Origin: Octopus sinensis
Lineage: Eukaryota
Assembly: GCF_006345805.1 (NCBI RefSeq)
Contig: NW_021832594.1
Span: forward strand, 1-64,000
Direction: 5' to 3'
DNA length: 64,000 nt
Shown one piece after another: positions 1,085 through 64,000 of this stretch (position 1 is the first letter of the stretch; every line of letters begins with the position of its first letter). The translations under genes and the position numbers were made by a program. The notes under the pieces were generated by a model. The model saw only the letters and a program-made list of their open reading frames with translations, searched no databases and was not told the origin of the DNA.

Positions 1085-1122
<38 letters not shown>

Positions 1123-1123
<1 letters not shown>

Positions 1124-3108: not shown

Positions 3109-3224
3109 TCATATTCCACTGCAATAGCACTCTTGGTGGTCTTTGATTTCCTTAACAAATGAAGATGGTGCCATTTATTTATATAATTGGTGACTAGTTC
3201 TGTCAATGTTATTAGAATCCGGCA
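3109..3224 (-). CDS. CENPI: CENP-I A exon 13: CRILITLTELVTNYINKWHHLHLLRKSKTTKSAIAVEY
   Basis: tattcag| acceptor is clear; the donor GA|gtatct is weak and its position is uncertain. Confidence 0.75.
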
Positions 3225-6200
3225 CTGAATAAAACAAAACAAGGATTAGTCATAGACATTTACAAGAACTATAAAGAGATTTAAAAGCGGTGCTCCAGCA
3301 TGGCCACAGTCAAATGACTGAAACATGTAAAAGAGTAAAAAAGATTAATATTGTTGTGTGTCAGTAAGTCTCAATTTAGTAAACTAAAGGAATGAGTTTA
3401 TGTTTATGTGCCAATGCTTTGTACATTCATTGTATCTGTCGAAAGTATTATTTATATCTGTATTTTCTGATGAACGGCATTGTTAGAAACTGCAGAGAAG
3501 GCCTCTGAGTGGGTTTGGGATGAAGAGGGGAGATTACTGCTATTGGGATGCTAAGTTGGGACTTGATCAATCCTGGCTGGGTCAACTGGGTGAGTGGGGT
3601 TTGATGTTAGAAGACCCAAACCCCAGTGGAGACCCTAGAAACATCACTGAACATTTGCAAGATGCATCTTAGAAACTAATAACAATCTCCTCATCCCATA
3701 TCCCTCTGCCTCCTCTTCCCCAAAGTTTCTCTGCCTCCTTGACACTCCTCACCCTCCTCTCTTTGATCTTCCTGCATGAAACCCCTACACTGCTCTTTCC
3801 TTCAATGATTCACCCAGGTTTCCTCTCTCCATTAATCTATTGCTTCCTTCCAAACCCTTTCCTCTCACATCTTCTGCCCACACTGGCCCCTTTTGATATT
3901 GGATAGCCCACTGCTTTTTCTCAACCCTGTTGCTACTTCCTTTGTGAAGTGGTTGAAGTTAAGAGGAGCAACCAACGATAGCAACCAGACCAAAGAGGCC
4001 CTTGGTCTACGACAGCCTTGTAACACATACACATTAGACCCTGTGAAACAATCCTACCTATTCCAGCATAGAAACTAGATGTAAAGTGCTTGATATTAGG
4101 ATGAGCAGCCAGCCATGGCAACAAGGCCAAAGACATTGGTGCAAGATTCAGTCCATCGACTCATCAAACCCTGTCACACTGACCAACCTGTGCCAGCACA
4201 GAAGCTAGATGTTGAGGAAGATGAAGAAGAAGAAGGAAGAGGATAAATACAGAGGTCAAGCATTTCAGAGCATTCTCTTGAAATAAAAAGAAATGATTAT
4301 CACATTTGCAAAAAGTAAATATCAATTGAAACAGAATGAAGAAGAGAAGAGAAATATTAAAAGAGTAATGCAATATTCTGATTTTACCTTTAAATAAGTT
4401 CCACGTCGGAAAAATATTTTCCTCAGGGGATCTAACAGAATCTGATGTAGTTCTGAATACGATATTTGAAAGGAAAATTAGAAAAGACAAAAAAATGATA
4501 GATATCAGTAAGAAAGTAAAGATTTACAATAACTTATCACTGAAAATATAAAATTTTTAGATAATTTCTTCCTTGAATTAAAAAGTTTGCAGGTGTAGCT
4601 TTTGTAAAAGCTGCAAACCTAGGCCACGTCTGATCCAAAAATCTGATTCAAGCCCAGGCTATCCCTGCTCGAATAATCAATGGTGACTTCACCAATTAAT
4701 ATTCTGCAATAGTTGATAATATACAAGATGAGCTACAATGAATCACCTCATCACAAAGTGCGTATGCATGGGATTAGGGACCACAAGTGGCCTTGTGTTC
4801 CCACTGAAACTATAAACATGAAATCTACACCCCAACAGCAAATGACAACCATAGCTACAGTGTTCAAGCTTCACTACAGCTGACTGTCTGACATGGTGAA
4901 CTCGCTGGTTGGAGCTGGTTCATTTCAGTCCAGGGTAATGCCACAACAAGCACAAGTATTGGATGAGATACCTTGCAATAATTGTTTCAGCTCTTAGCAT
5001 TCAGAGTTCAAATCCCACCATGGCCTACACAATCGACTCAGATGCAAACATTGAGGCCAAATCTCCAGTCTGAAAGATTAACCACCTACGTCCCCCAACC
5101 ACCAGTATCAAAGACCCTATAAAGGGTCATGGGCACCACCCTTCCTGCCTCACTAAAAGATTTAAAAAAATAAAAACGATTACCAAGAACTAAGTAAAAA
5201 CTTTCAAGAGTTTCAGCTGAGAAAATAGACAAGTTGTCATTGCGTTTAAAAACACACAGAATGTAAGGATCTTTTCGGTTGATGCCAAAGATTTGGTAAT
5301 TTTAAGATCAAGTAAAAATTTTCAAACTTGGAGTGTTGAAACTCTTTTACTTGTTTCAGTCATGCTGGAGTACCACCTTTAGTCGAGCAAATCGACTCCA
5401 GGACTTATTCTTTGTGAGCCTAGTACTTATTCTATCGGTCTCTTTTGTTGAACCACTAAGTTATGGGGACATAAACACACCACCATCAGTTGTCAAGCGA
5501 TGTTGTGGGGACAAATACAGACGCATATATATATATACATATATATGATGGCTTCTTTCAGTTTCTGTCTACAAAATCCACTCACAAGGCTTTAGTCGGC
5601 CTGAGGCTATAGTAGAAGACACTTGCCCAAGGTGCCACGCAGTGGGAGGACTGAACCCCAAACCATCAAACTTGGAGTGTTGATGTAAATTTTCACACTG
5701 AATCTGGGATTCATTTATTCCCAGGAAAATTTAGAAAAATATTACAGAGTTTCAAAGTTTGATAACTTAGTTCAGGCAGACAACAGGAATTGGAAGATGA
5801 AAACCTTCTGGAGGATAACTGTCAGAAAATGACAAATGATAGATACAACACAGCAGAAAATGATATCACTCATCAAAACTTGAGGTGGTTAAAGTGTCAC
5901 AGTGATGCAAGTTCCATGTCTTTCTTACAATGGAAACAAGGCTGACTACAGCTTTGCTATTTTCTTTGGAAACAAACACCAAAGTGAGATGTATGGTTGA
6001 GAATAAAACTGAAGAAATATGAAATCTCTGACAGCAACCAAAATGATCTGAATATAGTGGTGGTTAATCTAGTCAAATATTTCATTTATGTGTCGGTGGC
6101 ACATAAAATCACCCACTACACTCTCGGAGTGGTTGGCGTTAGGAAGGGCATCCAGCTGTAGAAACACTGCCAGATCTGACTGGCCTGGTGCAGCCTTCGG

Positions 6201-9200
6201 GCTTGCCAGACCCCAGTTTAACCGTCCAACCCATGCTAGCATGGAAAGCGGACGTTAAACGATGATGATGATATTTCTAATTGTGACCATTCTATTTTAT
6301 TCTAAGACTTACAATTTATAAGCATATATTTCTTTTATCTTTTACTCGTTAGAATGCTGCCATGCAACGGTGCAACCTTGAGAGAAATGGAAACAGCAAC
6401 ACTGCCATAACTTACATGGAAACCACGAATGTGCTTTTAAGGGAGGTAAGAGAAACACTTGAAAGTCAATGTAAGATCGTAATACTTCATGTAAAGTAAC
6501 TATAACAAATAATCCAGAACCTTTGTGTGTTACAGGATTGATCTCATAATCTAATCAGTTTGCGCCAGTCACGAGACCAAACATCCCTGAAAGTTTCATC
6601 TGAATCCATCCAGCAGTTCTTGAGATATCTTGTCCACAGACAAACAAACAAACACAACTGAAAAACAATACCTCTGCCTTTGCTAAGGCGGACGTAATAA
6701 CATTAACAATGAAAGCTATAGGGAGACCACCAATAAAAAGTTCTCATCTAATTTCAATCAAAGTGATTTACATATCACCATGAATTCAAAAAGCAGTTAT
6801 CGTTTTTTATTCCATTCCAGAGTTCAGAATTAGCTCTTTCATGTCAACAATCTTGTCATTCTCTATTTCTGTCTTTTTTTTGAGGATAATCAAAATATAA
6901 TAAATATATTATTAGTAAAACATAAATCATTAACTATATTTTAAAAACCATACTTACCTGAAAACTTGTGTATTCGGATGTGTGGAATCAATTTAAAAAT
7001 GGACTGATTAAAATGAAATCCATCCCAAGTATCAAGGAACTGGTACAGAAAATATTCAATAGCTGGGGTGCCTTCCTGATTGGGGTAGAAATAAAATATA
7101 AATGAATTAATTCATTACCATCATGCTAAAATAATTCTGTAAGAAAAATGCAATAACAAAAAAAAAAGTCTAAATCCACATTCTCCATAAGCCCTGGGGT
7201 TGATTTGTCCGACTAAAGGCAGTGCTCCAGCATGGCCGCAGTCAAAATGACAAACAAATAAAAAAATAAAAGAATCTTGAGCTTGTATAATCAGGACTGA
7301 CCTAGTGCTCATTCATACAATTCTATAAATAAACCTCTTTTAACACTTTTTATTAAAGATTAACCAATCATGAAAAAAAATGAGAAACCTGTTTTTCACC
7401 AAACATGTATTACAAAATGATGTTTCGCATTGATTATATAAGTTGAAAAATATCTATATATATAAAAGTGAAGTTGTGTGAGTGTCTGTCTCCTACGATT
7501 TAGATTCCTAACTACTCCCACATTTTGCGGTGCAGTTTAACCAAATTCGGGTATCTTATAGTCGTGATTCATATCGAGCCCGTCTGGGTATTAGCGCGCG
7601 TCTACGATGAGTCTACAATTTAAAAATAATTTAACATCATTTTTTTCCATTTCTTCCAATTTTATCGTGTGTCGATGGCGGCGGAGTTGGCGTCCATGCT
7701 CACACCTGCACCCGTGTTGCTTCTCCCCCCCTCGTGAAGCTGTGGGGAAGGGAGTGTAAGGAAATCAACGTCGTAAAGCGTTGTCAAGGAGACCAGCGTT
7801 CTTTTAGAACGACGACTTCATGGCTTGAAGTCGCCAAAACAGAAATCGCTAAAAAAGCTGAAACAGATCCACAAAAACGGCAAAAACCGCCACACAGGGC
7901 AGGTTTCCTGTGCAAACAATTTGCACAACCGAATGTTTTAGTTGTTGCACAAATCTTTATATATAAAAGTGAAGTTGTGTGTCTGTCTCCTGCGATTTAG
8001 ATTCCTAACTACTCCCACATTTTGCGGTGCAGTTTAACCAAAACCGGGTATCTTATAGTCGTGATTCATATTGAGCCCTTCTGGGTATTAGCGCGCGTCT
8101 ACGATGAGTCTACGATTTTAAAAATAATTTAACATCATTTTTTTCCATTTTAATGCATTTTTTTGCTATTATATAAGGGAAGTAACTCTCTAAAAATGTC
8201 TACGATGAGTCAACGATTTAAAAAAATTTACTATAATTTTTTTGCTATTTTTTGGCTATAACTCTCTAAAAATGCTTTATAGTTATTTCCCTTACAAACC
8301 CGAGCAACGCCGGGCGATACTGCTAGTATAATATATAAGCAAACGGAAAACAGACACAGAAGGCAACCAAATCCTCATCAGTTATCGCCCAAAGGATCCA
8401 ATGACGAAAGTGAAGCAAGTTAGCAATAACAGTTTTGAAAGGGACGTAACTCTGTGTTAGTCCCTGACTGAACTTAGCAATGTTTCCCTAAGACCACATA
8501 AATCTCACCTAACACTTAGAATTTGTCCAAAGGAAAGAAAAGGGCTGCTCCCCATCTTTCAAATAATAATCTTGAAAGAAAGTAATGAGAGTCATTAAAA
8601 AGGAAACGATAATGAATTCAACGTTTTAGCTTCATTCACTTCTTTCTTCTCTCAACAATTCATTGATGTTGTTTTACTTTAGGTCAGCCTCAGTCCAAAA
8701 AAAATCTATAATCAGAGACATTCCATCCTTGCTCATTTTGAATTTTTAGGGACTTCTAGGACTATATTATCTAATATGACCTATTGGCTTAATATCTCAA
8801 GATAATTCATGCAGAAAAACGCTTTGCCAGAGAGTTGCAGCTCTTGAAATGAAAGATGAAACAAATGTGGAGTGTAGGGGATGAAACACAGCAGATAAAT
8901 TGCAAGACAATGAGGTACAAATGTTTCAGTGGGGCTGGCCTGGCTGGAAGGGACCAAGAGTTTGTTCGTTCAGAAAAATTCTTTAAAAACAAAGAAAAAA
9001 AGACCTAATTACTTTTCTACTACTGATTAGGTTTTCCCAACAAAGCAACCCTTCGATGAAAATAATATTTAGCAATTTCTATAATAACAATATACTAGAA
9101 TATGAAGCACTTCAATTTTTACCAAAAAAGAAAACAAACCCAGTTGTAGTAAAGGTAGAAGTAGGAAAGGAATGGCCTGGGAGTCCATGGTTGAATTATG

Positions 9201-11690
9201 GTGATGAATGGGACTTCGTCAATAAGTTTTAACTGATTTCCTTTGAGTATGGTCCAAGATGTTTGTACATGTAGCTTCAGCATTGTTCTACGTTGGAGTG
9301 GCTGTGTGGTAAGTAGCTTGCTTACCAACCACATGGATCTGGGTTCAGTCCCACTGCGTAGCACCTTGAGCAAGTGTCTGCTATTATAGGCTTGGGCCAA
9401 CCAAAGCCTTGTGAGTGGATTTGGTAGATGGAAACTGAAAGAAGCCCGTCGTATATATGTATATATATATATGTGTGTGTGCATATGTTTGTGTCTGTGT
9501 TGGTTCCCAAACAAGGCTTGACAACCGATGCTGGCGTGTTTATGTCCCAGTAAGTTAGCGGTTCAGCAAAAGAGACTGATAGGCTTACAAAGAATAAGTC
9601 CTGGGGTTGATTTGCTCGACTAAAGGCGGTGCTCCAGCATGGCCACAGTCAAATGACTGAAACAAGTAAAAGAGTATATTGGAGAAGTTCTCTAACATGG
9701 GTATTAAGTGAGCTTTATCAAAAGTCAGCCACTAAATATTCTGACTTCAAAAAGGAAACCTAATATGAGATTGCCACACAAAAGATCATCAATCATAGGT
9801 GCAGGTATGGCTGTATGGTAAGAAATTTACTTCCCAACAACATGGTTCCAGGTTCAGTCCAACTGCATGGCAGTTTGCACAGGTGTCTTTTACTATAACT
9901 CTGAGCTGACCAAAGCCTCGTGATTGAATTTGGTAGACAGACACTGAAAAGAAGCATGTCGTATATGTATGTGTGTGTGTTTGTGAATGTGTGCCTTTGT
10001 GTCTGTGTTTGTCCCACACCACCTCCTGGCAACTGATGGTTAGTTTATGTCCTTTCTGTAACTTAGCAGCTCAGAAGTAGACTGATAAAACAAATATATA
10101 TCTGATTCAGAATGCTTCAAGTTGGTGCCCCGGCATGGCAGCAATATCTATAATAATAACATTCTACAATATCGAGAACTTTAATTTTTGTCTAAAAAAG
10201 AGAAATAACATCAAAAAACAAAGTAATTTACAATTATCAAAATCACAGAAAATAAAAAAGGTAAAATAAGTACCTTAGTACGACGCATGAACCCTGCTAA
10301 CTTTGACAGAAACTCTTCCAGATAATCATAATTTGGTACACTGTTTTCTATAAAAGCTGCAGAAGAAAATAAAGCATACTGGATTCAGTAAGAATAAAAA
10401 TCTGAGATAAGATGGCATACGTATGTACACAAATATATATATATACTAGCAGTATCGCCCGGTGTTGCTCGGGTTTGTAAGCGAAATAACTATATAAGCA
10501 TTTTTAGAGAGTTACTTCCCTTATAGATGCCAATTCGGGCTTTCTTAGCCATTTCTGTTTTGGTGTCTTCAAGCCATGAAGTCGTTGTTCTAAAAGAACG
10601 CTGGTCTCCTTGACAACGCTTTACGACGTTGATTTCCTTACACTCCCTTCCCCACAGCTTCACGAGGGAGGGAAGAAGGGGGAGAAGCAAACAGGTGCAG
10701 ATGTGAGCGTGGACGCCAACTCCGCCGTCATCGACACACGAAAAATTATGCATTAAAATGGAATAAAAAATGATGTTAAATTATTTTTTAAATCGTAGAC
10801 TCATCGTAGACGCGCGCTAATACCCAGACGGGCTCGATATGAATCACGATTATAAGATACCCAAATTTGGTTAAACTGCATCGCAAAATGTGGGAGTAGT
10901 TAGGAATCTAAATCGAAGGGGACAGACACTCACACAACTAGTTTTATATATATAGATATACACACACACACACATATATATATATATGTACATACATATG
11001 TTAATGGTTGTTTATGTTCATTTATCATGAAAACAATTTGACATTAATTTGATGGGTTACTTTATACTTCTCTAGAGTACAAATTCATAATTCTTAAACA
11101 AGAATACTGTTGACAGAGACTTTGAAGTTTTGGCCGGTTAAGCCATTGTTGGACTGTCTTATAATAGCTTAACTGACTTAAACTTTGAAATCACTGTCAA
11201 TAATGTTCTTGCTTAAAAATAATAAGCACATACATTATGGGCCCTCCCTTCATTGGATGACGCATGAGAAGTCAGCCATTTCTAGCTGTAGAACCACACA
11301 GGCGACTTGTTTATAGTAAATAAATGTATGTGCTGAATATTAGCTCACTCCCTCCATCAAATCGACATACTTGTACAGGTGCACAACATGCCACATGTCA
11401 GATGAGGAAATGCTTGCGGAGCAATGTGAAATGAAGTGTTTTGCTCAAGAATACAATGCCATACTCTTTTACTCTTTTACATGTTTCAGTCATTTGACTG
11501 TGGCCATGCTGGAGCACCGTCTTTAGTCGAGCAAATCGACCCCGGGACTTATTCTCTTGTAAGCCCAGTACTTATTCTATCGGTCTCTTTTGCCGAACCG
11601 CTAAGTAACGGGGACGTAAACACACCAGCATCAGTTGTCAAGCAATGCTAGGGGGACAAACACAGACACACAAACACATATAACACATAC

Positions 11691-11721
<31 letters not shown>

Positions 11722-11894
11722 CGACAGGTTTCTTTCAGTTTCTGTCTACCAAATCCACTCACAAGGCATTGGTCGGCCCGGGGCTATAGCAGAAGACACT
11801 TGCCCAAGATGCCACGCAGTGGGACTGAACCCGGAACCATGTGGTTGGTTAGCAAGCTACTTATCACGCAGCCACTCCTGCACCATGTATATAT

Positions 11895-11944
<50 letters not shown>

Positions 11945-12210
11945 TATGTTGGTGCAAACAGGAAAAATATAACTCAAAACATGAGTATATTCTTTCACTC
12001 TTTTACTTGTTTTAGTCATTTGACTGTGGCCATGCTGAAGCACCATCTTTAGTCGAACACATCAACCCCAAGACTTCTTTGTAAGTCTAGTACTTATTCT
12101 ATCAGTATCTTTGGCTGAACTGCTAAGTTACAGGGGCGTAAACACACCAGCATCAGTTGATTGTTGGGGGACAAACACAGACACACAAATACATAAACAC
12201 AGACATACAT

Positions 12211-12260
<50 letters not shown>

Positions 12261-15200: not shown

Positions 15201-15861
15201 ATGCTGATGACCTTGCTCTAATTGCTGAGTCACTATCAGAACTTGAGGAGAAGTTTCAGTGAAAAGGACACAACTAAAGTTGTAACATTCCTCTTAAATT
15301 ATTTATGGCAGTGGATCTCAAGTGGGGTCCATATGAGATTTTGTTCATGAAAAAAAATCATGTGAATTAAATTGGTTATATTTCTATAATAACACAAAAT
15401 ATTTTAATATCTTTTATATAATTCCAAATAATATTTAATTATAAAAATATAAATTGTTTTTAAACATAGAGAAACATTATAAAAATATATAAACATATTT
15501 TAAACAATAGGCGCAGGAGTGATTGTGTGGTAAGTAGCTTGCTTACCAACCACATGGTTCCGGGTTCAGTCCCACTGCGTGGTGCCTTGGGCCGACCAAA
15601 GCCTTGTGAGTGGATTTGGTAGAGGGAAACTGAAAAGAAGCCCGTTGTATGTATGTATATACATATGTGTTTGTCCCCACCAACATCGCTTGACAACTGA
15701 TGCTGGTGTGTTTACATCCCTATAACTTAGCGGTTCAGCAAAAGAGCCCAATAGAATAATTACAAGGCTTACAAAGAATAAGTCCTGGAGTCGATTTGCT
15801 CGACTAAAGGCGGTCCTCCAGCATGGCCACAGTCAAATGACTGAAATAAGCAAAAGAGTAA

Positions 15862-15900
<39 letters not shown>

Positions 15901-18007: not shown

Positions 18008-18046
<39 letters not shown>

Positions 18047-18213
18047 AGAAAAAAACTTACAGGACTTTTAGCAGATTTGTATGCTAAATTCCTTAATTCC
18101 AATCCCCTTCGTAGCTGAACACCTTGGATTATCTTTTGCAATCTTTGGTTTGGTATTCTATAAAAACACTGAAAAGTAGAATAGAGAGCAACACCACCAA
18201 CAATAATAATAAT

Positions 18214-18248
<35 letters not shown>

Positions 18249-20987: not shown

Positions 20988-21021
<34 letters not shown>

Positions 21022-21022
21022 A

Positions 21023-21089
<67 letters not shown>

Positions 21090-25295: not shown

Positions 25296-25330
<35 letters not shown>

Positions 25331-28300: not shown

Positions 28301-28497
28301 ACATCGATAGCACAATACGATTTTTGCTTGGAGGAGTGGCTGTGTGATAAGTAGCTTGCTTACCAACCACATGGTTCCGGATTCAGTCCCACTGCGTGGC
28401 ACTGTGGGCAAGTGTCTTCTACTATATAGCCTCGGGCCGACCAAAGCCTTGAGAATGGATTTGGTAGACGGAAACTGAAAGAAGCCCGTCGTGTGTA

Positions 28498-28548
<51 letters not shown>

Positions 28549-54900: not shown

Positions 54901-57651
54901 TTGAATTTCAGAAAAACTGAAGTGTACAAAAATCAAACATACAGACTATTTGTGCATGTGCTAGAATAACAAAATTATTACCAAGTCAATTGGTCTCTTG
55001 GTTAAATCATAGGCCTTTTGACAGCCAGTGAGAAGGATCAAGTTAACTAATCAATTAGTTTCGGCTCTTGTTAAAGCCATCGTCAGGATTTGATTACTTG
55101 TTTACTGAGACACAAAAGTGTGCACCACTGACTGAACCAGACCTGACCTAATTTACATAAATGTTGCTAGAGTGGTTGAGCGTATTAATGAACTGCTACA
55201 CTGACACAGCATATATGAGATTAGCTTCATAAACAGTTCCAATTTTGTATTTAATAAGCATATCTATATTCCCGTATGCCCACGGGCATATGGCGTAGTG
55301 GTAAAGAGTGCAAGCTACTAACCTCAAGATTCCGAATTCGATTCCAAGCAGTGACCTGAACAATAATAATAATAATAACATTGAAAAATTCCTTAGGAAT
55401 GAGAACCCAGGTTCGAAATTTCCCCAAGATACCCGAAGAAGGCTGGAGGGTATATCAGCTGAAATGCTGTATTAACAACAAAGATGAAGACAAATATCCG
55501 TCAAATGTAAATAATGTACATAATTCCTCATCTCTTAAATATAAAACTGTAATATCTATATCCATCTGCCTATCTGGCTATCATCTTCATCATTTTAATG
55601 TTGACTTCTCCATGCTTGATTCAACTACTTTGAATGCTTTACAGTTAATATGGTTTACAAGAGCTGCTGGCTCTGTTGTCAGTATGATATCTGCCAACCA
55701 GCTGAAGAGTCAGAGTTTATACTCTGTAAGCATTACTGCTCTATGTTTACAATGAAGGCACTTTACTCTGTTACATATCATAGACTGGAACTGTCTACTC
55801 CAGTAATCAGCATCTACATTATATAAGTTCTAAGATCCTTATTTTCGTTTCTGCTGCCATCATTCCACACTGGACTCAATATTAATGAATGTAAGTTATA
55901 TATCTTTTTCTCATTTGATGTTTTATCTTTTCAGGGGAATGTCCCTTCATTAATTGGTTTACTAACGAAATATAAGATGCTGCAGCCTGATAAATTAGGG
56001 CTGTCACTTCCAAAATATCAAGTAATTTTCTTTTTGTTTTTTCCATTTTTTTAACTATCAGTTTTACTTACACAAAGCTGCAAACACATAATGCTGTGCT
56101 CCAGCATGGCCTGAAATATATATACATAAATATTATTACTGCCATTTATTATCATTTTAAAGGCAGGTAACTGACAGAATTGCTTGCAAACCAGGCAAGA
56201 TGCTTACTGTAAATCCTTGAGTATAATCCGCATTTTTTCCCCAAAATTTAAAGGTCAAAATCCTTAGAGCATACTATGTACAAGGTTAAAAATGAAAAAT
56301 ATATTCTAAGCAATGTCCGAGTCTCTATTTGCTGTTTGGCAATGTTTATTCAGACGCATTTTGTGATGTCGGGCGCGAAAATACCTTAAGCTAAGCCTGA
56401 AAGCAATGAAGTCATAAAAGAATCATCTATAACTTGCAGTAAGCAACATTTATTAAAATAAAAGTATTCAGAACACAGAATAACATGTAACAAAAACAAT
56501 TTGCAAACATATTTACATTCCCATATAACAGTTAAGAACATCACCATTATTGTATTATGCATGCGCGGAAGTGTTTGTTCGACTGGCTTAATTACGCACG
56601 ACTCAAGTTAGAGAAGGAGTGTGTATTATACACAAGGTTTAGGTTTTCCAGAGGTACAGCCCCCTAAAAATCTCCTGCGTATTATACTCAAGGGTGGACT
56701 ATACTCAAAGATTTACGGTAATGGTATTTCTCCTGTCTCTTCACATCCCAAGTTTGTTATACAACCAACAACTATGTTCTTTTTTATTCATATATCAATT
56801 TAATATCACGCTATCGATATACAGCTGATTTAGTGCCTTTTGACATCTTTCTGCATCTCTATCTTCTCCAGGAAGCTATGCAATTCATCTTCTATGAGGC
56901 TAGTTAATTTTTCAAATAATAGTAAGCATGGCAAAACATAGATCTATATTTACTAATCTACCCTCGCTTTTCTTTATCCGTCTGTACTTGCACTGTATGC
57001 CAGGTACATGCATCACAACCACACGTGCAAAAATGGTGACCTCCTATCAAGACAAAATGTGCATGACATTACAGGTGGGGACCGAGTTTGAATTTTCTTC
57101 GGATTGAGTAGCCCCTCATGCTCAAAAGGTCCCTGAATAAGTGCTGTTTAAGGCTAAGGAATAAAACACCTTTGTTTCCACGGGTGAATTATTCAAGCAC
57201 CCCCCCCCCCCCCAAACCCTCTCAATACATGGCTATGATGCTCCCTCACTATTCTTGCTTTGATCAGAGATGCACATATCGTCAGCCACTAAGGGACATG
57301 CTCAACTGGTTGTGGTGAAACAGATGACAAGCAAATCTGTGGTATTACCGAACATGACATTTGCTGTGGTCCATTTTTTGTACCAAGGCAAAACCTGTTT
57401 ATGTTAACACTCCCAATCAGTTAACATCAGAAGCCATGAGAACTGCTGCCTCTTATTGCATCGGGGCATTTATTATTATTATTAGTAGTAGTAATTCCTC
57501 TTGCTCTTTAATTTTTGAGTTCAAATTCCTCTAAAGTCAGCTTTGTCTTTTGTCCTTTCAGCATAAATAAAATAAGCACCAGCTTAGATGTAATCAACTA
57601 ATCCTCCCCCATTGAAAATTGCTGCCCTTGTGCCAAAATTTGAAACCATTG

Positions 57652-57686
<35 letters not shown>

Positions 57687-60600
57687 GTTGGTGCTCTCTA
57701 TTCTACTTTTCAGCGCTTTTATAGATCACCAAATTCAAAAATGCAAAAGATTATCCAAGCTGTTCAGCTACGAAGGGGACTGGAATTAAAAGCTTTAGCA
57801 CAGAAATCTGTTAATAGTCCAGTAAGGTTTTTTTCTTTTCTTTTTTTTTTCAATGTTTTTATCTGTCTTTGATTTTAAAAAAATACTGTCGAGATTAAGT
57901 TACATATGCTAACATGCTAACTTAAAGATAGCATTTTGGCAGTGACATATATAAGTAAATCAATTATCCAGAGTATATTTTTTGTGTGAAGTAAGTAAAA
58001 TATATTAAACACAGTTGGAGAATGGCAGGAGCAGGGTTAAGAATTACTGATGTGGAGATTCCTGCAGTGATTAATCAACGGTCACCCTCATTCAGTACAC
58101 TTTTGATCAAAGGCTTCCAACCACAATCATCTGTTCTCTTATATAGCGGAGACCACGACTGAGGCTGTTCCCATGTGTGGTTAGACACTGATGAGCCTTC
58201 ATAGAAATTGTAAATACAAATTGAGATATTACAATAAGCTAAAAGTAGCTACTTGAACCATTTTGATTGACTTCGCGCACACACCACTTTTATTTTTTTC
58301 AGTATGCTTGTTTGAAGCGATCACTTCGGAAACAAATTTATGCAGATTGTAAACAAACACAAAATGGGGGATCAAAGTTTGGAAAATTTGTGAAGCAAAT
58401 ACTGGGTACTGTTGTGGATTTAGTTTTTATACAGGGAAACTAATGTTAGTCAGCACGGCTTAGGGTACGATGTGGTCTGGAAGTTATTGTTTGAAGCGAT
58501 CAATGTGGAAACAAATTTACGCAGATTGTAAACAAACACAAAATGGGGGATCAAAGTTCGGAAAATTTGTGAAGCAAAAATACTGAGTACTGCGGTGGGT
58601 TTAGTTTTTATACAGGGAAAATAATGTTAGTCGGCATGGTCTAGGGGACGATGTGGTCTGGAATTTATCACTTCCATACCATAACCAGGGCTGTATATTA
58701 TTTTTTGACTGGTCAAACTTACGGTGGATTCCAGTATTTCAGTTTATTCCACCTTTATGGTACACCTGTTGTGCATTAAATTCAATTGATGATCTAGTGA
58801 TGTGCACAATTCTTCTTTATCAAAATTTTGTTGCATCACCATTTGAATATTAGCTGATGATTCATTTTCTATGGTGATGTTTAAACAAAATTTTAATATT
58901 TTTACCTTTTGCTCAATTTACCTGGATTTACCTGTAATTAAAGTCACTTTGAGACAAAAGTTATGCAATAGAATTGATTAAGAACCCTTTCTTTAATTAT
59001 GTTCCAAATATCACATTAATATGTTGATAAGTAAAAAAGTTACAGTTATTTAATGAAACAAGCCTAAATTCATGATTATTTTAGAATTTAATTGAAATTC
59101 ATGAGGGGTGTATTTTGGTCAGAAATATTGTAACGAAAGGGTTAAATTATGATGATGTGCTTGAAAGGTGATGGTTGTTATTCTCCTTTCCAAAGTGAAG
59201 AAAACATTTGTTTATCTTTCATGATTTCATTTCCAAGATTCACAATGCCATATACCAGTGGTTCTCGACCATTTTTTTTATTTGTGGAACCCTTTGAGTT
59301 CTATTTTACTTGGGTGGACCTTCATTGCCAGTCAGTGTTTAAAAACATTTTTGTATTGTTTAAAACATGTATATATATTTTTATTATGTTTCTATTATAA
59401 CGGTGATTATCTGGTTTATAATGGTTTTGACTTGGAAGAGATAATAAATATATATTTTTCTTGAGTAGGAATCTATGGTGATAAACGTGTCACTTATAAC
59501 TTAATCATAAGCATTTATCACCATGCATAAGTCTTAACTGAGGCTGTATAACTGCTGTGGGGAATTATACACACCACAAGACGCTGAACATGCTTGCTTT
59601 TTGTTTTTCACCTCTATAACAACAGTTTCATACTTGCAGAAATAAATTTCATCGACAGGTTGAAGAAAATGAAGAAAAAGAAATTATTTACTAAATTAGT
59701 TTGTTTACAGTACATTTATAAGTCAAAAGAAAAATGTCATAGTGAATTACGACATAAAATTTATATTAACTAATTCTTCCATAACTAAGCTACAAGAGTT
59801 TTAAACAATTCAAAATAGCCTTGTTGAATTATATAAAAGACTTGGCATTGCAATGACCACTATCTCAAGTGAGTGAGTGCCGTGGAATTGAGTGACAACC
59901 AATGAACACTGATTAATTTCCCCAAAATCAGGGTTTTTAAAGCTGTTCCTACCTGAATACTAAGAACTGTATTTTGTGAAAGATTTCTCTTTGATGAAAG
60001 TTAGAATTCAAATATGGGCAGTAATTTTAACCAATAGGAAACTAATAATTATACCTATTCGGGCAACATGACCATTACATCATATTACCGCCGATAAGGG
60101 TTTATTAGGACTTGCATCGTTACACTGTATTTAAAAACATTTTATATGTTTATAATTAAATATTATTAGTATCCGAGTTGACAGTACCTTGGTAGATAAA
60201 GCAATTAAGAGTATGAAGACAGGTAAAGCCCCCGGCCCATCAGGAATCACTGCAGAGATGCTCAAAATATCTGGCAGTGTCGGCTATAGCCTAGTCAGCT
60301 GTATAGTTAACCAGGTGATACACGAAGGAGTCATACCCAATGACTGGTGTAGCAGCACTATAGTCAATTGCTACAAAGGTAAAGGTAACGCTTTCGATAC
60401 AAATAATTAGAGAGGTATCAAGATATTGGATCAAGTAATGAAGGTCATGGAGAGGGTTATAGCCCAACTAATTAGGGAGAGAGTCAGTTTACATGAGATG
60501 CAGTTTAGGTTCGTGCCAGGGAAAAGCACCCACTACACTCTCGGAGTGGTTGGCGTTAGGAAGGGCATCCAGCTGTAGAAACTCTTCCAGATCAGATTGG

Positions 60601-61222
60601 AGCCTGGTGCAGCTATCTGGTTTGCCAGTCCTCTGTCAAATCGTCCAACCCATGCCAGCATGGAAAATGGACGTTAAACGATGATGATGATGAATTGTAT
60701 AAAAGAAATTTTAATATTTTGTGTATTATAGAAATATAACCAATTTATTGCACATGATTTGTTTAATGAGCAAAATCTCATATGGGCCCCACTTGAGAGC
60801 CACTGCCGTAAACGTTTTATGAGGAATGTTACAAGTTTAGTAATGTGTCCTTTTCACTGAAACTTCTCAAGTTCTGATAGTGACTCAGCAATTAGAGCAA
60901 GGTCATCAGCATAGAGGAGCTCCCAGGGGATCCTGTCTTGAATTCCTCCATTATTGCTTGGAGGACTATGATAAATAGGAGGAGGCTGAGGACTGAACCT
61001 TGGTGGACCCCAACCTCTCTTAAAGTGAAATAATATCATTATCTTGTTTTTCAGGTTCGAAAGAAAGCCAAACTGAGTAAATTAATTCCTCAGGTTCAAT
61101 CTTCAGTAAATGATTATGTACCAACTTCTGATATTGTGAGGCCGGACCACTTTCCTGAAACTGTTTCATTCAACAGGATACTCACATTTGAAGACCTTCT
61201 TCAGTATATCGATCAAATTCAA
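33851..61222 (+). CDS. CENPI: CENP-I copy B (inverted paralog); 8 exons in window, continues past the right edge
   Basis: Exons 33851-33953, 42503-42634, 49719-49849, 51043-51150, 54202-54297, 55935-56021, 57714-57821, 61055-61222 (933 nt, 311 codons, no stop). Exon lengths and phases are identical to copy A. 63800-64000 aligns with the copy A intron just upstream of exon 9. Confidence 0.88.
34136..34316. mobile_element. hAT (Charlie-like) MITE
   Basis: CAGTG..TTTTCAA TIRs; 8-bp TSD GTGTAGAT. Confidence 0.9.
35091..35359. mobile_element. MITE with TIRs of about 57 bp
   Basis: CATTCCTTCGATGTAACTCGACAAAATCAAAACATTTCACTTCGGGTA.. is mirrored at 35304-35359; TSD not resolved. Confidence 0.65.
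41102..41320. mobile_element. hAT MITE, same family as 34136-34316, opposite orientation
   Basis: TIRs CAGTG/CATTG; 8-bp TSD CATTATAC. Confidence 0.9.
41930..42174 (-). mobile_element. Short non-autonomous Helitron in B intron 1 (paralogous to 27601-27896, small internal deletion)
   Basis: Reverse-complement match with shared flanks. Confidence 0.78.
42503..42634 (+). CDS. CENPI: CENP-I B exon 2: (E)SSFKKPRGKLKTCIVNVKVCARAVGLSHEDILGLVNVAASLRY
   Basis: AG/GT intact; 3 nt and 2 aa differences from A. Confidence 0.87.
43170..43710 (-). repeat. 30-bp minisatellite (about 18 units), paralog of 26325-26605
   Basis: Tandem CATGTGCACCTTGATGCAGCTGTCCTCATC units with shared flanks. Confidence 0.9.
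45028..48147 (-). mobile_element. R4/Dong-clade non-LTR retrotransposon (RT + RLE endonuclease), internally deleted and dead, arm B only
   Basis: ORF pieces: N-terminal KWSREDN; RT YMDDL* (in-frame stop); YLGV...HPKAD.ERLY..RK.GGRGL; ETEGFIIAAQDQ, CCHC knuckle, RHD, NRPDI. Flanked by (TAA)n on both sides. Confidence 0.88.
49719..49849 (+). CDS. CENPI: CENP-I B exon 3: (G)IRISCDLIQCCIPQTTFPQRAAIRLLSCINHHTISEKANTSFT
   Basis: AG/GT intact; 11 nt and 6 aa differences from A. Confidence 0.86.
50139..50365 (+). mobile_element. SINE family C; other copies at 23562-23788(-), 24375-24600(-), 62348-62483(+), 62484-62706(-)
   Basis: GGCGGCGAGCTGGCAGAA..GAGTTCAAATT..GGGGTCGAT..AATAAAGAAATA repeated. 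Confidence 0.8.
51043..51150 (+). CDS. CENPI: CENP-I B exon 4: KLVFHWIVLVMPYMDAYDKLHAVYNVFFYLLRNYDI
   Basis: Identical to A exon 4 (0/108 nt). Confidence 0.9.
51729..52600 (-). mobile_element. Tc1 (DD34E) transposon, 5'-truncated
   Basis: TA|CAGGGGTTGGACAAAATA TIR; KHGG.SVMIWG, FQDDNAPIH, WPPQSP motifs. Confidence 0.88.
52690..53330 (+). mobile_element. RTE LINE ORF2 3' part; arm A keeps only the distal piece (about 22390-22678, minus)
   Basis: FCYL.D...ARIRLAWAKFRELLPLL...GHV..MDEDSCVK...GRPRKTW. Confidence 0.85.
54202..54297 (+). CDS. CENPI: CENP-I B exon 5: LPEICYILSELTLYPDVTLFRINELILLWKKT
   Basis: Identical to A exon 5 (0/96 nt). Confidence 0.9.
55270..55551 (+). mobile_element. tRNA-headed SINE with 10-bp TSD, arm B only
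   Basis: A box TGGCGTAGTGG, decayed B box, TSD ATATCTATAT; empty site in arm A at about 20197-20206. Confidence 0.8.
55935..56021 (+). CDS. CENPI: CENP-I B exon 6: GNVPSLIGLLTKYKMLQPDKLGLSLPKYQ
   Basis: 2 nt and 1 aa difference from A. Confidence 0.88.
56207..56718. mobile_element. Tc1/pogo-type MITE, arm B only
   Basis: TIRs CTGTAAATCCTTGAGTATAATCC / GGACTATACTCAAAGATTTACGG, TA TSD; empty site GATGCTTA|ATGG in arm A near 18680. Confidence 0.85.
57714..57821 (+). CDS. CENPI: CENP-I B exon 7: RFYRSPNSKMQKIIQAVQLRRGLELKALAQKSVNSP
   Basis: AG/GT intact; 21 nt and 11 aa differences from A, with no indel or stop. Confidence 0.85.
58309..58668 (+). repeat. Tandem duplication of a unit of about 180 bp
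   Basis: TGTTTGAAGCGATCA...GATGTGGTCTGGAA occurs twice head-to-tail. Confidence 0.85.
60175..60522 (+). mobile_element. RTE LINE RT N-terminal fragment
   Basis: AIKSMKTGKAPGPSGI.AEMLK...IP.DW..S.I...YKGKG....N.RGI. Confidence 0.85.
61055..61222 (+). CDS. CENPI: CENP-I B exon 8: VRKKAKLSKLIPQVQSSVNDYVPTSDIVRPDHFPETVSFNRILTFEDLLQYIDQIQ
   Basis: AG/GT intact; 7 nt and 5 aa differences from A. Confidence 0.88.
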
Positions 61223-61967
61223 GTAAGAGCAGCTTTTCTTCCTTATTTTCCTTCCCATTTTGATTAAATAAACCTTATGTGAGAAACACGGATTTAGGTA
61301 ATTAACAAATGTTTCTTAAAGATAACACAGTCAATAAATAATGCAAGACATGTATAATGTGTGGGGGTTTATACTGGGTAATGTGATACTGAGGTATGTG
61401 ATCCCTACTCATAACTGCTGACGGATCGGCTGTATGGTAAGTAGCTTGCTTACCAACCACATGGTTCCATGTTCAGTCCCTCTGCGTGGCACCTTGGGCA
61501 AGTGTCTTCTACTATGGCCTTGGACCGACCAAAGCCTTGTGAGTGGAGTTGGTAGACAGAAACTGAAAGAAGCCCGTCGTATATGTGTATGTTTGTGTGT
61601 CTGTGTTTGTCCCCCCAACATCGCTTGACATCCCCGTAACTTAGTGGTTTGGCAAAAGGGACCGATAGAATAAGTACTAGACTTCCAAAGAATAAGTCCT
61701 GGGGTCGATTTGCTTGACTAAAAGCGGTGCTCCAGCATGGCCACAGTCCAATGACTGAAACAAGTAAAAGAGTAAAAGTATAAGTTTGTGTTATTAGACC
61801 CTAGTAGTTCAGTTTGCTTTCAATTTTTATTACTAGTAACACTTATTGTGATTGTGTCTAGTGGACTTAGGCTTAGCTGACTCTTTAGTGTATGGCTGCA
61901 TCAGATGCAGAGCAATTTTTTGATACAATAAAGAATAAGTGTTGCATATCTTTTATACCAATAAGTA

Positions 61968-63659
61968 TCAGGTTGGAATGAAAGTTACGTCTGATTGTAA
62001 AGTTTTTATTTATGTTTCTAGAAATATTTAATTATTCTCATAATGACCATTCCTTCATAGAACCTTATTTCATTTGTCAACAAGCTTATAGATGCTGTGA
62101 TTGTAAAATGCTTTAGTTTTTGATGCAAAGTATGATACCAATTATTTTCAGCCTCTTCTCCTGATGTCAACCTAAGACCATCCAAGTGATTCTGTGATAA
62201 TCATGGGGTGCAAGGACAGGAGAATATGGACGATGAAGCAATTTCTCTCAACAGAGCTCTTCCAAGGGATCTTCTGTCAATTGTGTAGTATGTGGGTGAG
62301 CATTATCGTGATGCACACACACACATACTCACACACACACACACAAACGTGGCGAGCTGGCAGAAACGTTAGCACACCAGGCGAAATGCTTAGCAGTATT
62401 TCGTGTGTCTTTATGTTCTGAGTTCAAATTCCGCCAAGGTCGACTTTGCTTTTCATCCTTTCGGGGTTGATAAATCAAGTACCTATTTCTTTACTACCCA
62501 CAAGGGGCTAAACACAGAAGGGACAAACAAGGACAGACAAACGGATGTCGATTTTATCGACCCCAGTGCGTAACTGGTACTTATTTAATCGGCCCCGAAA
62601 GGATGAAAGGCAAAGTCGACCTTGGCGGAATTTGAACTCAGAACGTAGCGATAGACGAAATACTGCTGACCATTTCGCCCGGCGTGCTAACGTTTCTGCC
62701 AGCTCGCAAGTACTATTTAAGTACTGGGTTCGATCTAATCTACTGGCCGCCTCCCCAAAAATTTTGGACCTTGTGCCTGGAGTAGAAAAGATTAACGTGA
62801 TGCAGAATGACTCCCTTTCTGTTAGGATGGGTGATTTTTGTCCAAAGCTGCTTTCAAACGATGAAGTTGATTGCAGTAAAGATTGGTGTCTAACAGTTTG
62901 TAATGGATAATTTCCTGAATATTCCACCATACATTCCTCAGGATCTTCTTTGGATGAAGTCATCCTCTTGGTTGCTGAGCTGGTCTGCTTCCTCAACTGA
63001 TTCATTGACATCAATGTTAAATACTATGATAAAGGATCCACTTCTCAACACCAGTAACAAGCCTCTCCAAAAATGGCATGTGACACTTGTCGTGTAAGCA
63101 ATGACTCACAACAAGCAATAAATTGTTGCAGATTCTCTTGAGATGGGTCGTGCGGGACCTATTTTCCAACTACTGAAGCCTTGCCAATTCTTATCAGTTC
63201 GCATAGGATAGTTGTATGGCTTGCTTTGAATTTCTTGGCTAGTTCCCTAGCACTAGGAACAGGGTTTGCTGTGATAACATCTTCCAGCTCTTGGGAATCA
63301 AAAGCTTTCAGATGATCTTTCTTTGGCTCATTGCCTAAGTTTCCACTTTGAAAACAGGGGAAACCAATTCCTGCAACTTCTTTCATTTACTACATCTCCT
63401 AAGTACTCTGAATGGAATTTGCTGCTGCTGCACTCACGTTGACACCTTTATGAAACTTGCATGGTAAAGCACATCTAATGTGTTCTTTGATTGAAGTGAA
63501 CATCAAAGAAGACTGTGAGCAATATTCTTTTAGCCTGAAAGAAGAAAATATAAATTACTCTTTGTTTCATTCCATGATTGACAACAAGAAGCAATACTTT
63601 AATAAATGTTGTCTAAAATTTCATTTAGAAAATCGAACTAAACTTTCATTCCAACCTGA
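61968..63659 (-). mobile_element. Decayed near-full-length mariner with both TIRs, interrupted by SINEs
   Basis: TA|TCAGGTTGGAATGAAAGTT and AACTTTCATTCCAACCTGA|TA; VPHD and HRPYSPVLAPHDYH (YSPDL) remnants. Confidence 0.8.
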
Positions 63660-64000
63660 TACAATGCCGTATTTATGGCATAAAAGACACACCAGCATAT
63701 TCAACACACCCTAATCTCAGCTGTGCCTATTTTGGAAAAAGTAAGCATCAGGAACGAAATTAGTTTATGGGACCTGGGGTCACTTTTTGAGAGCTTTCTT
63801 TTATTAAAAATGTCTGTCTTCATTGGTAAATACAGTATTTAAACAGTATCGGTAAATACTGTTTATTTAAAGAATGCTGATCAGAAGAAATCTAACAATT
63901 AGAGCTAAACTTTTTCCAGGTGTAAAAAGTACAGCATGGGATCATTTGCAATGTTTTGTCAAAGAGTAAGTGATTCTTGGTCTTTTCATAAATATCTTTT

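What the first reader, a model, noticed from the sequence alone, without database searches (positions are those of the whole stretch)
3109..64000. Head-to-head palindromic pair of apparently intact CENP-I kinetochore genes
Seen: two oppositely oriented genes with ATGs at 31622(-) and 33851(+). They share 8 exons with identical lengths and phases, intact GT-AG sites and no stops, at about 88% amino-acid identity (37/311 differences). Introns and promoters align as reverse complements around a 466-bp spacer. Established: CENP-I is a CCAN (CENP-H/I/K/M) subunit that is usually single-copy, and retained paralogs of centromere proteins (e.g. Drosophila Cid, CENP-C) often specialise in germline or meiosis. 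Inference: this could be an undescribed two-paralog CENP-I system under a shared bidirectional promoter, with dosage or specialised function.
Basis: partly seen in the sequence, partly recalled or inferred. Interest (0 to 1): 0.92.

Follow-up and report, generated by a model that had tools for sequence, protein, structure and literature searches.

The report
Inverted pair of octopus CENP-I genes
Octopus carries two head-to-head copies of the kinetochore gene CENP-I that are real, intact and conserved in a sister species. Both are already in public gene annotations, and nothing yet shows that they do different jobs.

Summary
Two oppositely oriented CENP-I genes start at 31622(-) and 33851(+). 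They share 8 exons of identical length (933 nt), all with AG/GT splice sites and no stops, and differ at 37 of 311 residues. Their arms align as a diverged palindrome (about 75-98% identity) around a spacer of about 0.5 kb.

The window is the first 64 kb of Octopus sinensis unplaced scaffold VCDQ01001647.1. A second scaffold (99.5% identical) and the O. vulgaris chromosome assembly show the same head-to-head pair, so it is not a misassembly. O. bimaculoides also has inverted copies of exons 10-11.

With neighbouring contigs added, both copies have 19 exons and about 700 codons. The 18 compared exons are intact in both species. Each copy has been under purifying selection since the two species split (dN/dS 0.26 for A, 0.15 for B). 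Between the copies dN/dS is about 0.6, and the differences concentrate in poorly conserved segments. Gene conversion has patched parts of the arms.

The "shared bidirectional promoter" is not supported: each arm carries its own promoter copy. Both genes are already RefSeq and ENA models, although no paper in the searched library describes them. Specialised function is untested. Interest is moderate.

The parts
3109..31622 (-). CENP-I copy A, exons 1-13. The gene runs off the start of the scaffold, so exons 14-19 are not in the window.
   Evidence: Exons are 31622-31520, 27273-27142, 24207-24077, 22887-22780, 21369-21274, 19820-19734, 18168-18061, 15058-14891, 13808-13688, 10356-10274, 7075-6958, 4452-4388 and 3224-3109, all with AG/GT boundaries. 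The product plus read-through of intron 13 equals XP_036355056.1 exactly. Pfam PF07778 E=7.8e-58.
33851..61222 (+). CENP-I copy B, exons 1-8. Exon 9 begins 18 nt past the window end.
   Evidence: Exons are 33851-33953, 42503-42634, 49719-49849, 51043-51150, 54202-54297, 55935-56021, 57714-57821 and 61055-61222, all with AG/GT boundaries. The translation is identical to XP_036355444.1 and XP_036355055.1. Exon 5 (54202-54297) is skipped in isoform X2.
13826..32302 (-). Left palindrome arm, the part whose partner lies inside the window.
   Evidence: It forms a colinear reverse-complement chain with 32809-64000. The chained blocks are 74-97% identical; individual blocks reach 97.7%.
32809..64000 (+). 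Right palindrome arm. It is longer than the left arm because of arm-specific insertions, for example about 34484-40113, 44980-48883 and 51252-53569.
32303..32808 (.). Unpaired spacer at the palindrome axis.
   Evidence: No inverted match is found within it. It is single-copy in all the sequence held here and is 98.1% identical in O. vulgaris.
31623..32302 (-). Upstream region (promoter) of copy A, which forms the inner end of the left arm.
   Evidence: It aligns to the upstream region of B. A conserved core ...GAAGAATATACATTCTCCTTTAAC..ACAGTCACGTGTTCA.CCGGGA..TTTAAATTT lies within about 110 nt of each ATG.
32809..33850 (+). Upstream region (promoter) of copy B, which forms the inner end of the right arm.
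   Evidence: Across the whole centre the sequence is 96.2% identical to the O. vulgaris centre.
33291..33625 (.). Insertion of about 330 bp with terminal inverted repeats (MITE-like), about 230-560 nt upstream of the ATG of copy B and absent from copy A.
   Evidence: It appears as a gap in the alignment of A against B. Its terminal inverted repeats show up as a self-match, and the insertion is also present in O. vulgaris.
19680..24340 (-). High-identity stretch of the arms (93-98%) covering exons 3-6 of A. This is a probable gene-conversion tract, with B converting A in the O. sinensis lineage.
   Evidence: Block identities are. At exons 3-4 there are 23 'concerted' sites against 108 sites that group A with A and B with B. 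At exon 5, the O. sinensis A copy is closer to both B copies than to the O. vulgaris A copy.

Best explanation
The window holds the centre of a large, old inverted duplication (a palindrome of about 110 kb) that copied the whole CENP-I gene, its promoter and about 4 kb of 3' flank in an ancestor of Octopus sinensis, O. vulgaris and probably O. bimaculoides.

Both copies have been kept as protein-coding genes. Each encodes a full-length CENP-I of about 700 aa, the subunit of the CENP-H/I/K/M module of the inner kinetochore. Each is presumably transcribed outward from its own mirrored copy of the promoter.

The arms have diverged to about 75-80% identity in most non-coding sequence and have gained different transposon insertions. 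Occasional arm-to-arm gene conversion has re-homogenised some patches to 93-98%. Copy B is the more conservative copy. Copy A changes protein sequence faster but is still constrained.

Shown here: the structure, intactness, conservation between species, purifying selection and conversion patches. Inferred: that both copies are transcribed and both proteins are loaded at kinetochores. Whether they are redundant (dosage) or divided by tissue or stage is open.
For: Structure and exon identity:
-.

CENP-I identity:
- Pfam PF07778 matches copy A at E=7.8e-58.
- Residues 49-699 of copy B align with residues 92-737 of human CENP-I (PDB 7PKN chain I) at E=1.5e-58.
- The nearest non-octopus relatives are named CENP-I in a crinoid, amphioxus, bivalves, an annelid and a snail.

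Not an artefact:
- Scaffold VCDQ01001672.1 matches window 41622..1 at 99.48%.
- O. vulgaris OX597823.1 has the same pair with ATGs 2,250 bp apart. Its centre is colinear at 96.2% and includes the spacer and the MITE-like insertion.

Intactness:
- All 18 compared exons have equal lengths, AG/GT boundaries and no stops in copies A and B of both species.

Age:
- Informative sites group A with A and B with B across the two species: 518:0, 62:1, 291:0, 172:1 and 225:0 in five blocks.
- All 37 window differences are among 57 residue differences fixed in both species.
- O. bimaculoides has a + copy with B-type intron structure and an inverted copy of exons 10-11 with A-type intron segments.

Selection:
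- Between the two species, copy A has dN/dS 0.26 (15 nonsynonymous, 16 synonymous; P=2.7e-4 against neutrality).
- Copy B has dN/dS 0.15 (6 nonsynonymous, 11 synonymous; P=1.8e-4).
- The exons have no indel, against 125 indel events in 5.1 kb of flanks.

Conversion:
-.
Against: - No expression data could be reached. No transcript-derived octopus proteins are in the protein collection.
- dN/dS between the paralogs is 0.59-0.67, and the 62 differences in the window fall almost evenly across codon positions (18, 21, 23).
- Exons 1 and 7 are as diverged (82.5% and 80.6%) as their flanks. This fits relaxed constraint on parts of one copy.
- Gene conversion from a functional copy could help keep a non-functional copy open.
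- The O. sinensis assembly is fragmented here. Copy A is cut by the scaffold start, and the distal arms had to be taken from other contigs.
- The O. bimaculoides evidence rests on two exons next to assembly gaps.
Confidence: 0.72

Rival explanations
1. One copy, most likely A, is an unexpressed or functionally dispensable duplicate. Its reading frame looks intact because of its age structure and because gene conversion from the functional copy B repairs it from time to time.
For: - Copy A accumulates amino-acid changes faster than B since the species split (dN 0.0092 against 0.0037).
- dN/dS between the paralogs is about 0.6, with differences spread evenly across codon positions.
- Exons 1 and 7 are as diverged as the neighbouring introns.
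- A conversion tract from B into A covers exons 3-5 in O. sinensis.
Against: - Copy A is significantly constrained in the comparison between orthologues (dN/dS 0.26, P=2.7e-4).
- All 18 compared exons keep their length, splice sites and frame in two species, and no exon has an indel.
- The most diverged exons (1, 7, 8, 10) lie outside the conversion tracts and are still intact.
- 25 of the 37 window differences fall at residues 6-38 and 207-253. Residues 6-38 lie before the start of the alignment to human CENP-I, and 207-253 fall where that alignment is gapped. The even codon-position spread is therefore expected for low-constraint segments of a working protein.
Confidence: 0.15
2. The two copies are functionally specialised paralogs, for example a germline, meiotic or early-embryo CENP-I and a somatic one. 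Their diverged promoters would drive different expression.
For: - Both copies are retained and constrained in at least two species.
- There are 57 fixed protein differences.
- The upstream regions are only about 76% identical, and a 330-bp insertion is present only in B.
- The two copies evolve at different rates.
- CENP-I shows signatures of positive selection in rodents (PMC10292211).
Against: - There is no expression or localisation evidence.
- The conserved parts of the protein are nearly identical between the copies: exons 4 and 5 are 100% and exons 2 and 6 are 97.7%.
- The core promoter motif is conserved in both arms.
- No test for positive selection was possible because no species lacking the duplication was available as an outgroup.
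Confidence: 0.25
3. The palindrome is an assembly artefact, either a false inverted duplication or haplotypes joined head to head.
For: - The O. sinensis locus is badly assembled. Two redundant unplaced scaffolds start at the same base.
- The chromosome scaffold has a gap where the centre should be.
- The distal arms are placed 620 kb apart.
- The right arm of this scaffold switches from B-type to A-type sequence beyond the window.
Against: - The arms differ by 2-25% and by many kilobases of different insertions. Haplotypes or fold-back read artefacts would be nearly identical.
- The same structure is present in the separate O. vulgaris chromosome assembly, which has no N in the 72-kb and 66-kb loci.
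Confidence: 0.02

Closest known systems
Vertebrate CENP-I (human CENP-I in the CENP-H/I/K/M module of the CCAN; PDB 7PKN, 7QOO, 7R5S)
   Same: The octopus and human proteins are colinear over almost the full length (octopus B residues 49-699 against human 92-737, E=1.5e-58). The Pfam family is the same and the size is similar (about 700 aa against 756 aa).
   Different: Here there are two genes instead of the usual single gene (the usual copy number is from my own knowledge). Sequence similarity to human CENP-I is low outside the conserved helical core. No biochemical data exist for the octopus proteins.
Retained paralogs of centromere proteins (Drosophila Cid and Cenp-C duplicates; named from my own knowledge)
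   Same: A centromere or kinetochore component is duplicated, both copies are retained across species, and both are under purifying selection while evolving at different rates.
   Different: Those cases involve CENP-A and CENP-C and have shown germline-biased expression. Here the duplicated gene is a CENP-H/I/K/M subunit, the copies form a palindrome, and no expression data are available.
Large gene-bearing palindromes with arm-to-arm gene conversion (primate sex-chromosome palindromes; from my own knowledge)
   Same: There are inverted arms of tens of kilobases around a short unique spacer, each arm carries a copy of a gene, and there is evidence of sequence exchange between the arms.
   Different: Arm identity here is about 75-98% and patchy, whereas those palindromes exceed 99.9%. 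The arms differ by many insertions, so conversion is occasional and local rather than pervasive. The locus sits on a chromosome-scale scaffold, and nothing is known about any sex linkage.
Existing database gene models: O. sinensis XP_036355056.1/057.1 (A), XP_036355444.1/445.1 and XP_036355055.1 (B); O. vulgaris CAI9729259.1 (A) and CAI9729258.1 (B)
   Same: These are the same loci. Copy A from the window plus intron-13 read-through equals XP_036355056.1 exactly, and the window exons of copy B equal XP_036355444.1 and XP_036355055.1.
   Different: The models are automated and partly wrong. The 518-aa 'X1' models end in intron 13 only because the scaffolds end there. The 705-aa model joins B exons 1-12 to mostly A-type distal exons. 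The O. vulgaris A model skips exons 13-14 and part of exon 15, although those exons are intact. None of the models notes the palindrome or the paralogy.

Membership tests
CENP-I / Mis6 / Ctf3 (Pfam PF07778) | A match to the family profile above the curated threshold over most of the domain. | tested here: met
   Copy A (479 aa) scores 196.9 bits (cut-off 23), E=7.8e-58, covering profile positions 58-506 of 515. Copy B (311 aa) scores 94 bits.
CENP-I / Mis6 / Ctf3 (Pfam PF07778) | Full-length colinearity with an experimentally characterised CENP-I. | tested here: met
   Residues 49-699 of copy B align with residues 92-737 of human CENP-I (7PKN chain I) at E=1.5e-58. There are also hits to Cenp-I 5Z07 and to 9OKB.
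CENP-I / Mis6 / Ctf3 (Pfam PF07778) | The nearest relatives in other animals are CENP-I orthologues. | tested here: met
   An exhaustive search gave 230 hits. The best non-octopus hits (28-35% identity, about 700 aa) are named centromere protein I in Antedon, Branchiostoma, Sinanodonta, Crassostrea, Pomacea and Paralvinella.
CENP-I / Mis6 / Ctf3 (Pfam PF07778) | Localises to kinetochores and binds CENP-H, CENP-K and CENP-M. | not testable with these tools
   This needs cell biology or biochemistry.
Retained functional paralogs of a centromere/kinetochore protein | Two complete, undisrupted coding sequences. | tested here: met
   All 18 compared exons have equal lengths, AG/GT boundaries and no stops in copies A and B of O. 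sinensis and O. vulgaris. The O. sinensis sequences were composed from overlapping contigs.
Retained functional paralogs of a centromere/kinetochore protein | Each copy is conserved across species and under purifying selection. | tested here: met
   Site patterns that group A with A and B with B dominate. dN/dS is 0.26 for A and 0.15 for B, both significantly below 1.
Retained functional paralogs of a centromere/kinetochore protein | Both copies are transcribed, with or without different tissue profiles. | not testable with these tools
   No octopus transcript-derived proteins are in the collections. The existence of alternative RefSeq isoforms for both loci is only an indirect hint.
Palindrome maintained by arm-to-arm gene conversion | Inverted arms around a short unique spacer. 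| tested here: met
   The arms are at least 18 kb and 31 kb within the window and about 50 kb and 58 kb in O. vulgaris. The spacer is about 0.5 kb.
Palindrome maintained by arm-to-arm gene conversion | Near-identity of the arms (above 99%) along their length. | tested here: not met
   Block identities are about 75-98%, and large insertions are specific to one arm.
Palindrome maintained by arm-to-arm gene conversion | Phylogenetic signal of exchange between the arms after speciation. | tested here: met
   At exons 3-4 there are 23 concerted sites. At exon 5 the O. sinensis A copy is closer to both B copies (0.035-0.042) than to the O. vulgaris A copy (0.088). Elsewhere there are 0-1 such sites.
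Gene pair with one shared bidirectional promoter | Divergent start sites less than about 1 kb apart that share a single promoter region. | tested here: inconclusive
   The ATGs are 2,229 bp apart. Each arm has its own copy of the upstream sequence and core motif, separated by the spacer. Transcription start sites are unknown.

The most novel reading that the evidence does not exclude
Octopuses maintain two functionally distinct CENP-I proteins, for example a germline, meiotic or cleavage-stage CCAN variant and a somatic one. The two genes sit in an old palindrome whose arms still exchange sequence. This would be the first case of a duplicated and specialised CENP-H/I/K/M subunit in an animal, and a cephalopod entry point into paralog-based centromere specialisation.
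Probability: 0.2. Interest if true: 0.7.

Novelty: new member of a known kind. Interest (0 to 1): 0.45.

Why it matters
Inner-kinetochore (CCAN) subunits are normally single-copy. The known retained duplicates (CENP-A, CENP-C) have taught a good deal about germline-specific centromere function and centromere drive.

A CENP-I pair kept intact and constrained in at least two octopus species would add a CENP-H/I/K/M subunit to that list, in a group whose chromosome biology is almost unstudied. The pair has 57 fixed differences, which make paralog-specific expression easy to score in existing RNA-seq.

The locus is also a clean example of an old autosomal-scale palindrome with patchy gene conversion.

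On the practical side, current gene models at this locus are truncated or chimeric because the palindrome breaks assemblies. Anyone counting kinetochore genes in cephalopods should know this.

Tried and rejected
I used curated exon concatenations instead.
- The first protein search, with a crude concatenation, returned only one protein. The word-indexed search is not a reliable negative. The exhaustive search and the cluster look-ups found the rest.
- The look-up of isoform X2 (P0001) found nothing, because only the longest product of each gene is indexed.
- I searched for exons 14-19 of copy A in window 1-3108 with a profile built from 12 metazoan CENP-I proteins and found none. The reason is that the scaffold starts about 650 bp short of exon 14.
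- I first took the 705-aa RefSeq model as proof that B is complete on this scaffold. Sliding identity showed that the scaffold changes from B-type to A-type sequence near exon 13, so the distal exons of B were taken from the chromosome contig L005 instead.
- The spacer contains an open frame that looks to me like a LINE endonuclease fragment, but Pfam gives no hit in either frame tried. It is also not repeated in about 400 kb of held sequence, so I do not claim a transposon origin.
- A six-sequence MAFFT alignment of the exon 10-11 region gave inflated distances because of the insertions. I replaced it with local alignments.
- I looked for transcript-derived (Logan) octopus CENP-I proteins to test expression and found none.
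- Literature searches for CENP-I with octopus or cephalopod, and for CENP-I paralogs, found nothing relevant.


Full report

Yes. I rebuilt both gene models from the sequence. Copy A runs on the minus strand from the ATG at 31622, and copy B runs on the plus strand from the ATG at 33851.

The first eight exons of the two copies have identical lengths (103, 132, 131, 108, 96, 87, 108 and 168 nt, 933 nt in total). Every internal boundary is AG/GT and neither frame has a stop. Copy A continues with five more exons down to 3109.

BLAST of the left half against the right half on the opposite strand gives a single colinear chain from 32302..13826 to 32809..64000. About 10.7 kb is aligned at 74-97% identity in the chained blocks, and individual blocks reach 97.7%. 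The chain is interrupted by insertions specific to one arm. None of this can be chance.

**2. What are the genes and where is the window from?**

A crude exon concatenation already hit Pfam CENP-I/Mis6. The 13-exon product of copy A scores 196.9 bits (E=7.8e-58) over profile positions 58-506 of 515.

The full-length B protein aligns with human CENP-I (PDB 7PKN chain I) from residue 49 to 699, E=1.5e-58. An exhaustive profile search found 230 relatives. The best non-octopus hits are proteins of about 700 aa named centromere protein I in a crinoid, amphioxus, bivalves, a snail and an annelid. Family membership is therefore secure.

Exact-sequence look-ups show that both genes are already annotated:
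- Copy A plus read-through of intron 13 is XP_036355056.1.
- The window exons of copy B are those of XP_036355444.1, XP_036355445.1 and XP_036355055.1.
- All of these are named 'centromere protein I-like [Octopus sinensis]'.

The window is positions 1-64000 of the unplaced scaffold VCDQ01001647.1 (107,611 bp, assembly GCA_006345805.1).

**3. What lies beyond the window?**

It is not. Exon 9 begins at record position 64018, and the 705-aa RefSeq model maps to 19 GT-AG exons ending at 90043.

That model is not a clean copy B, however. Sliding-window identity shows that the right arm of the scaffold is 100% identical to a chromosome-placed B contig (L005) up to about exon 12. From about exon 13 onward it is 100% identical to a chromosome-placed contig carrying the distal part of copy A (L006). 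The switch falls in a stretch of about 240 bp where the two contigs are identical to each other. The left end of the window is also A-type and matches L006 at 99.3%.

I read the switch as a probable assembly chimera. A real recombinant haplotype is less likely but not excluded. Either way it lies outside the window.

The true distal exons of B are in L005 and those of A are in L006. The 518-aa 'X1' models of both genes end in intron 13 simply because the scaffolds end there. No C-terminal exon is present in window 1-3108, because the scaffold starts about 650 bp short of exon 14.

**4. Is the palindrome an artefact?**

No, for three reasons:
- A second unplaced scaffold (VCDQ01001672.1) matches window 41622..1 end to end at 99.48%.
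- The O. vulgaris chromosome assembly (OX597823.1), a separate assembly of a different species, has the same two genes head to head with ATGs 2,250 bp apart. Its centre is colinear with the window at 96.2%, including the spacer and a 330-bp insertion upstream of B.
- The arms differ by 2-25% and by many kilobases of different insertions. Fold-back or haplotype artefacts would not look like this.

In O. vulgaris the arms stay colinear through the whole gene and about 4 kb beyond its 3' end. The arms are about 50 kb and 58 kb long, and the whole structure is about 110 kb.

**5. How old is the pair and are both copies kept?**

In both species, all 18 compared exons of both copies have the same lengths, AG/GT boundaries and no stops. 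The only variation is a donor shift at the end of exon 18.

Informative sites overwhelmingly group A with A and B with B across species: 518:0, 62:1, 291:0, 172:1 and 225:0 in five blocks. All 37 window differences are among 57 residue differences fixed in both species. The duplication therefore predates the split of O. sinensis and O. vulgaris.

In O. bimaculoides, the annotated gene (exons 8-19) shares B-type intron structure. Within 5 kb upstream, across assembly gaps, lie inverted copies of exons 10 and 11 whose intron shares A-type segments. The pair is therefore probably older still, but this rests on a gapped assembly.

**6. Selection**

Between the two species:
- Copy A has 15 nonsynonymous and 16 synonymous changes (dN/dS 0.26; P=2.7e-4 against neutrality).
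- Copy B has 6 nonsynonymous and 11 synonymous changes (dN/dS 0.15; P=1.8e-4).
- The difference between A and B is not significant.

The exons have no indel, whereas their 400-nt flanks have 125 indel events in 5.1 kb. Both copies have therefore been under purifying selection as coding sequences.

Between the paralogs dN/dS is 0.59-0.67, and the window differences are spread almost evenly over codon positions. However, 25 of the 37 differences fall at residues 6-38 or 207-253. Residues 6-38 come before the part that aligns with human CENP-I, and residues 207-253 fall in a gapped, poorly aligned linker. Exons 4 and 5 are identical, and exons 2 and 6 are 97.7% identical. This pattern fits divergence in low-constraint segments. 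It neither demands nor excludes adaptive divergence.

**7. Gene conversion**

Arm identity is bimodal. It is about 75-82% in most non-coding blocks and 93-98% in others. Around exons 3-5 the O. sinensis A copy carries 23 'concerted' sites and is closer to both B copies than to its O. vulgaris orthologue. This indicates a B-to-A conversion of a few kilobases after speciation. Elsewhere the copies evolve independently.

**8. The centre and the promoter claim**

Each arm brings its own upstream region: about 680 bp for A, and the same sequence plus a 330-bp insertion with terminal inverted repeats for B. The two regions are about 76% identical. A well-conserved core (...CTCCTTTAAC..ACAGTCACGTGTTCA.CCGGGA..TTTAAATTT) lies within about 110 nt of each ATG.

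This makes two mirrored promoters 2.2 kb apart, not one shared bidirectional promoter. Co-regulation through the same motifs is plausible but is inferred.

The spacer is single-copy in the sequence I hold and is 98% conserved in O. vulgaris. Its resemblance to a LINE endonuclease fragment got no Pfam support.

**9. Most likely explanation**

An old inverted duplication of the whole CENP-I locus has been retained as two working genes. Copy B is the conservative copy and copy A evolves somewhat faster. Occasional arm-to-arm conversion has patched parts of the arms (confidence about 0.7).

The main rival is that copy A is silent or dispensable and only looks intact (about 0.15). The artefact reading is essentially excluded.

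**10. Comparison with what is known, and novelty**

The proteins are members of the CENP-I family. The arrangement resembles retained paralogs of centromere proteins (Cid and Cenp-C in Drosophila; from my own knowledge). It also resembles gene-bearing palindromes, but it fails their defining near-identity of arms.

CENP-I shows signatures of positive selection in rodents (PMC10292211). I found no report of CENP-I paralogs or of this octopus locus.

Because both genes already exist as automated database models, the new element is recognising them as a conserved, constrained palindromic paralog pair. That makes this a new member of a known kind, of moderate interest. One inexpensive test would decide between the explanations: counting RNA-seq reads at the 57 fixed differences.

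Noticed in passing
L001 about 47,555-47,800 (record VCDQ01001647.1 about 71.4-71.7 kb, outside the window): The right arm of the scaffold changes from 100% identity with the chromosome-placed B contig to 100% identity with the A-distal contig, inside a stretch of about 240 bp where the two contigs are identical. RefSeq XP_036355055.1 (705 aa) is therefore a B(exons 1-12)/A-type(exons 13-16, 18) mosaic. Exon 17 is B-type again.
   Followed up: partly
window 1 and L007 (VCDQ01001672.1): Two unplaced O. sinensis scaffolds begin at exactly the same base, in intron 13 of copy A, and are 99.48% identical over 41.6 kb. They are probably haplotigs or redundant paths that break at the same place.
   Followed up: partly
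L005 30203-30302; L005 and L006 on CM016867.1: The chromosome scaffold has a 100-N gap exactly where exons 1-7 of B and the palindrome centre should be. The A-distal contig is placed about 620 kb away in the same orientation, inside the span of a 2,443-aa VWD/C8/TIL gene model. This is likely a scaffolding error.
   Followed up: no
window 33291-33625: A MITE-like element of about 330 bp with terminal inverted repeats lies upstream of copy B only. It is shared with O. vulgaris.
   Followed up: partly
window 2105-2513, 9295-9676, 15506-15869, 28332-28773, 40114-40530 and others: A dispersed repeat of about 400 bp (SINE-like) occurs many times in both arms at 80-88% identity. A second family (for example 12766-13009, 15935-16219, 21996-22157, 36095-36386, 60522-60692) is equally frequent.
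   Followed up: no
window 45406-47371 (-): Three consecutive ORFs (158, 218 and 186 aa) lie in a 3.9-kb insertion found only in intron 2 of B. One has a weak zf-RVT hit (E=8.7e-5, below the cut-off), so this is probably the tail of a non-LTR retrotransposon.
   Followed up: partly
window 26309-26605 and 43173-43726: A tandem array with a period of about 30 nt lies in intron 2 of both copies, with different copy numbers. It was seen as repeating 'HLDAAILIH'-like translations.
   Followed up: no
L006 exon 18 (A distal, outside the window): The O. sinensis A copy ends ...DFISRLQTKTE. B, O. bimaculoides and the O. vulgaris copies have ...DFISRFIDSRL(D)LQTKTE. The donor used in the O. sinensis A copy (GT) reads TC in the others, so the C-terminus is 5-7 residues shorter.
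   Followed up: partly
RefSeq isoforms of copy A (P0162, P0160): XP_029656271.1 corresponds to skipping of exon 12 (65 nt), which shifts the frame and stops in exon 13. XP_036355057.1 ends ...HKFSAKL after exon 11. Alternative isoform models hint at transcript support for copy A, but I could not check this.
   Followed up: no
window 52437-52550 (-): A short, weak similarity (35% over 40 aa) to part of CENP-I in a tblastn search looks spurious. It lies in a 2.3-kb insertion found only in B that has higher G+C content.
   Followed up: no
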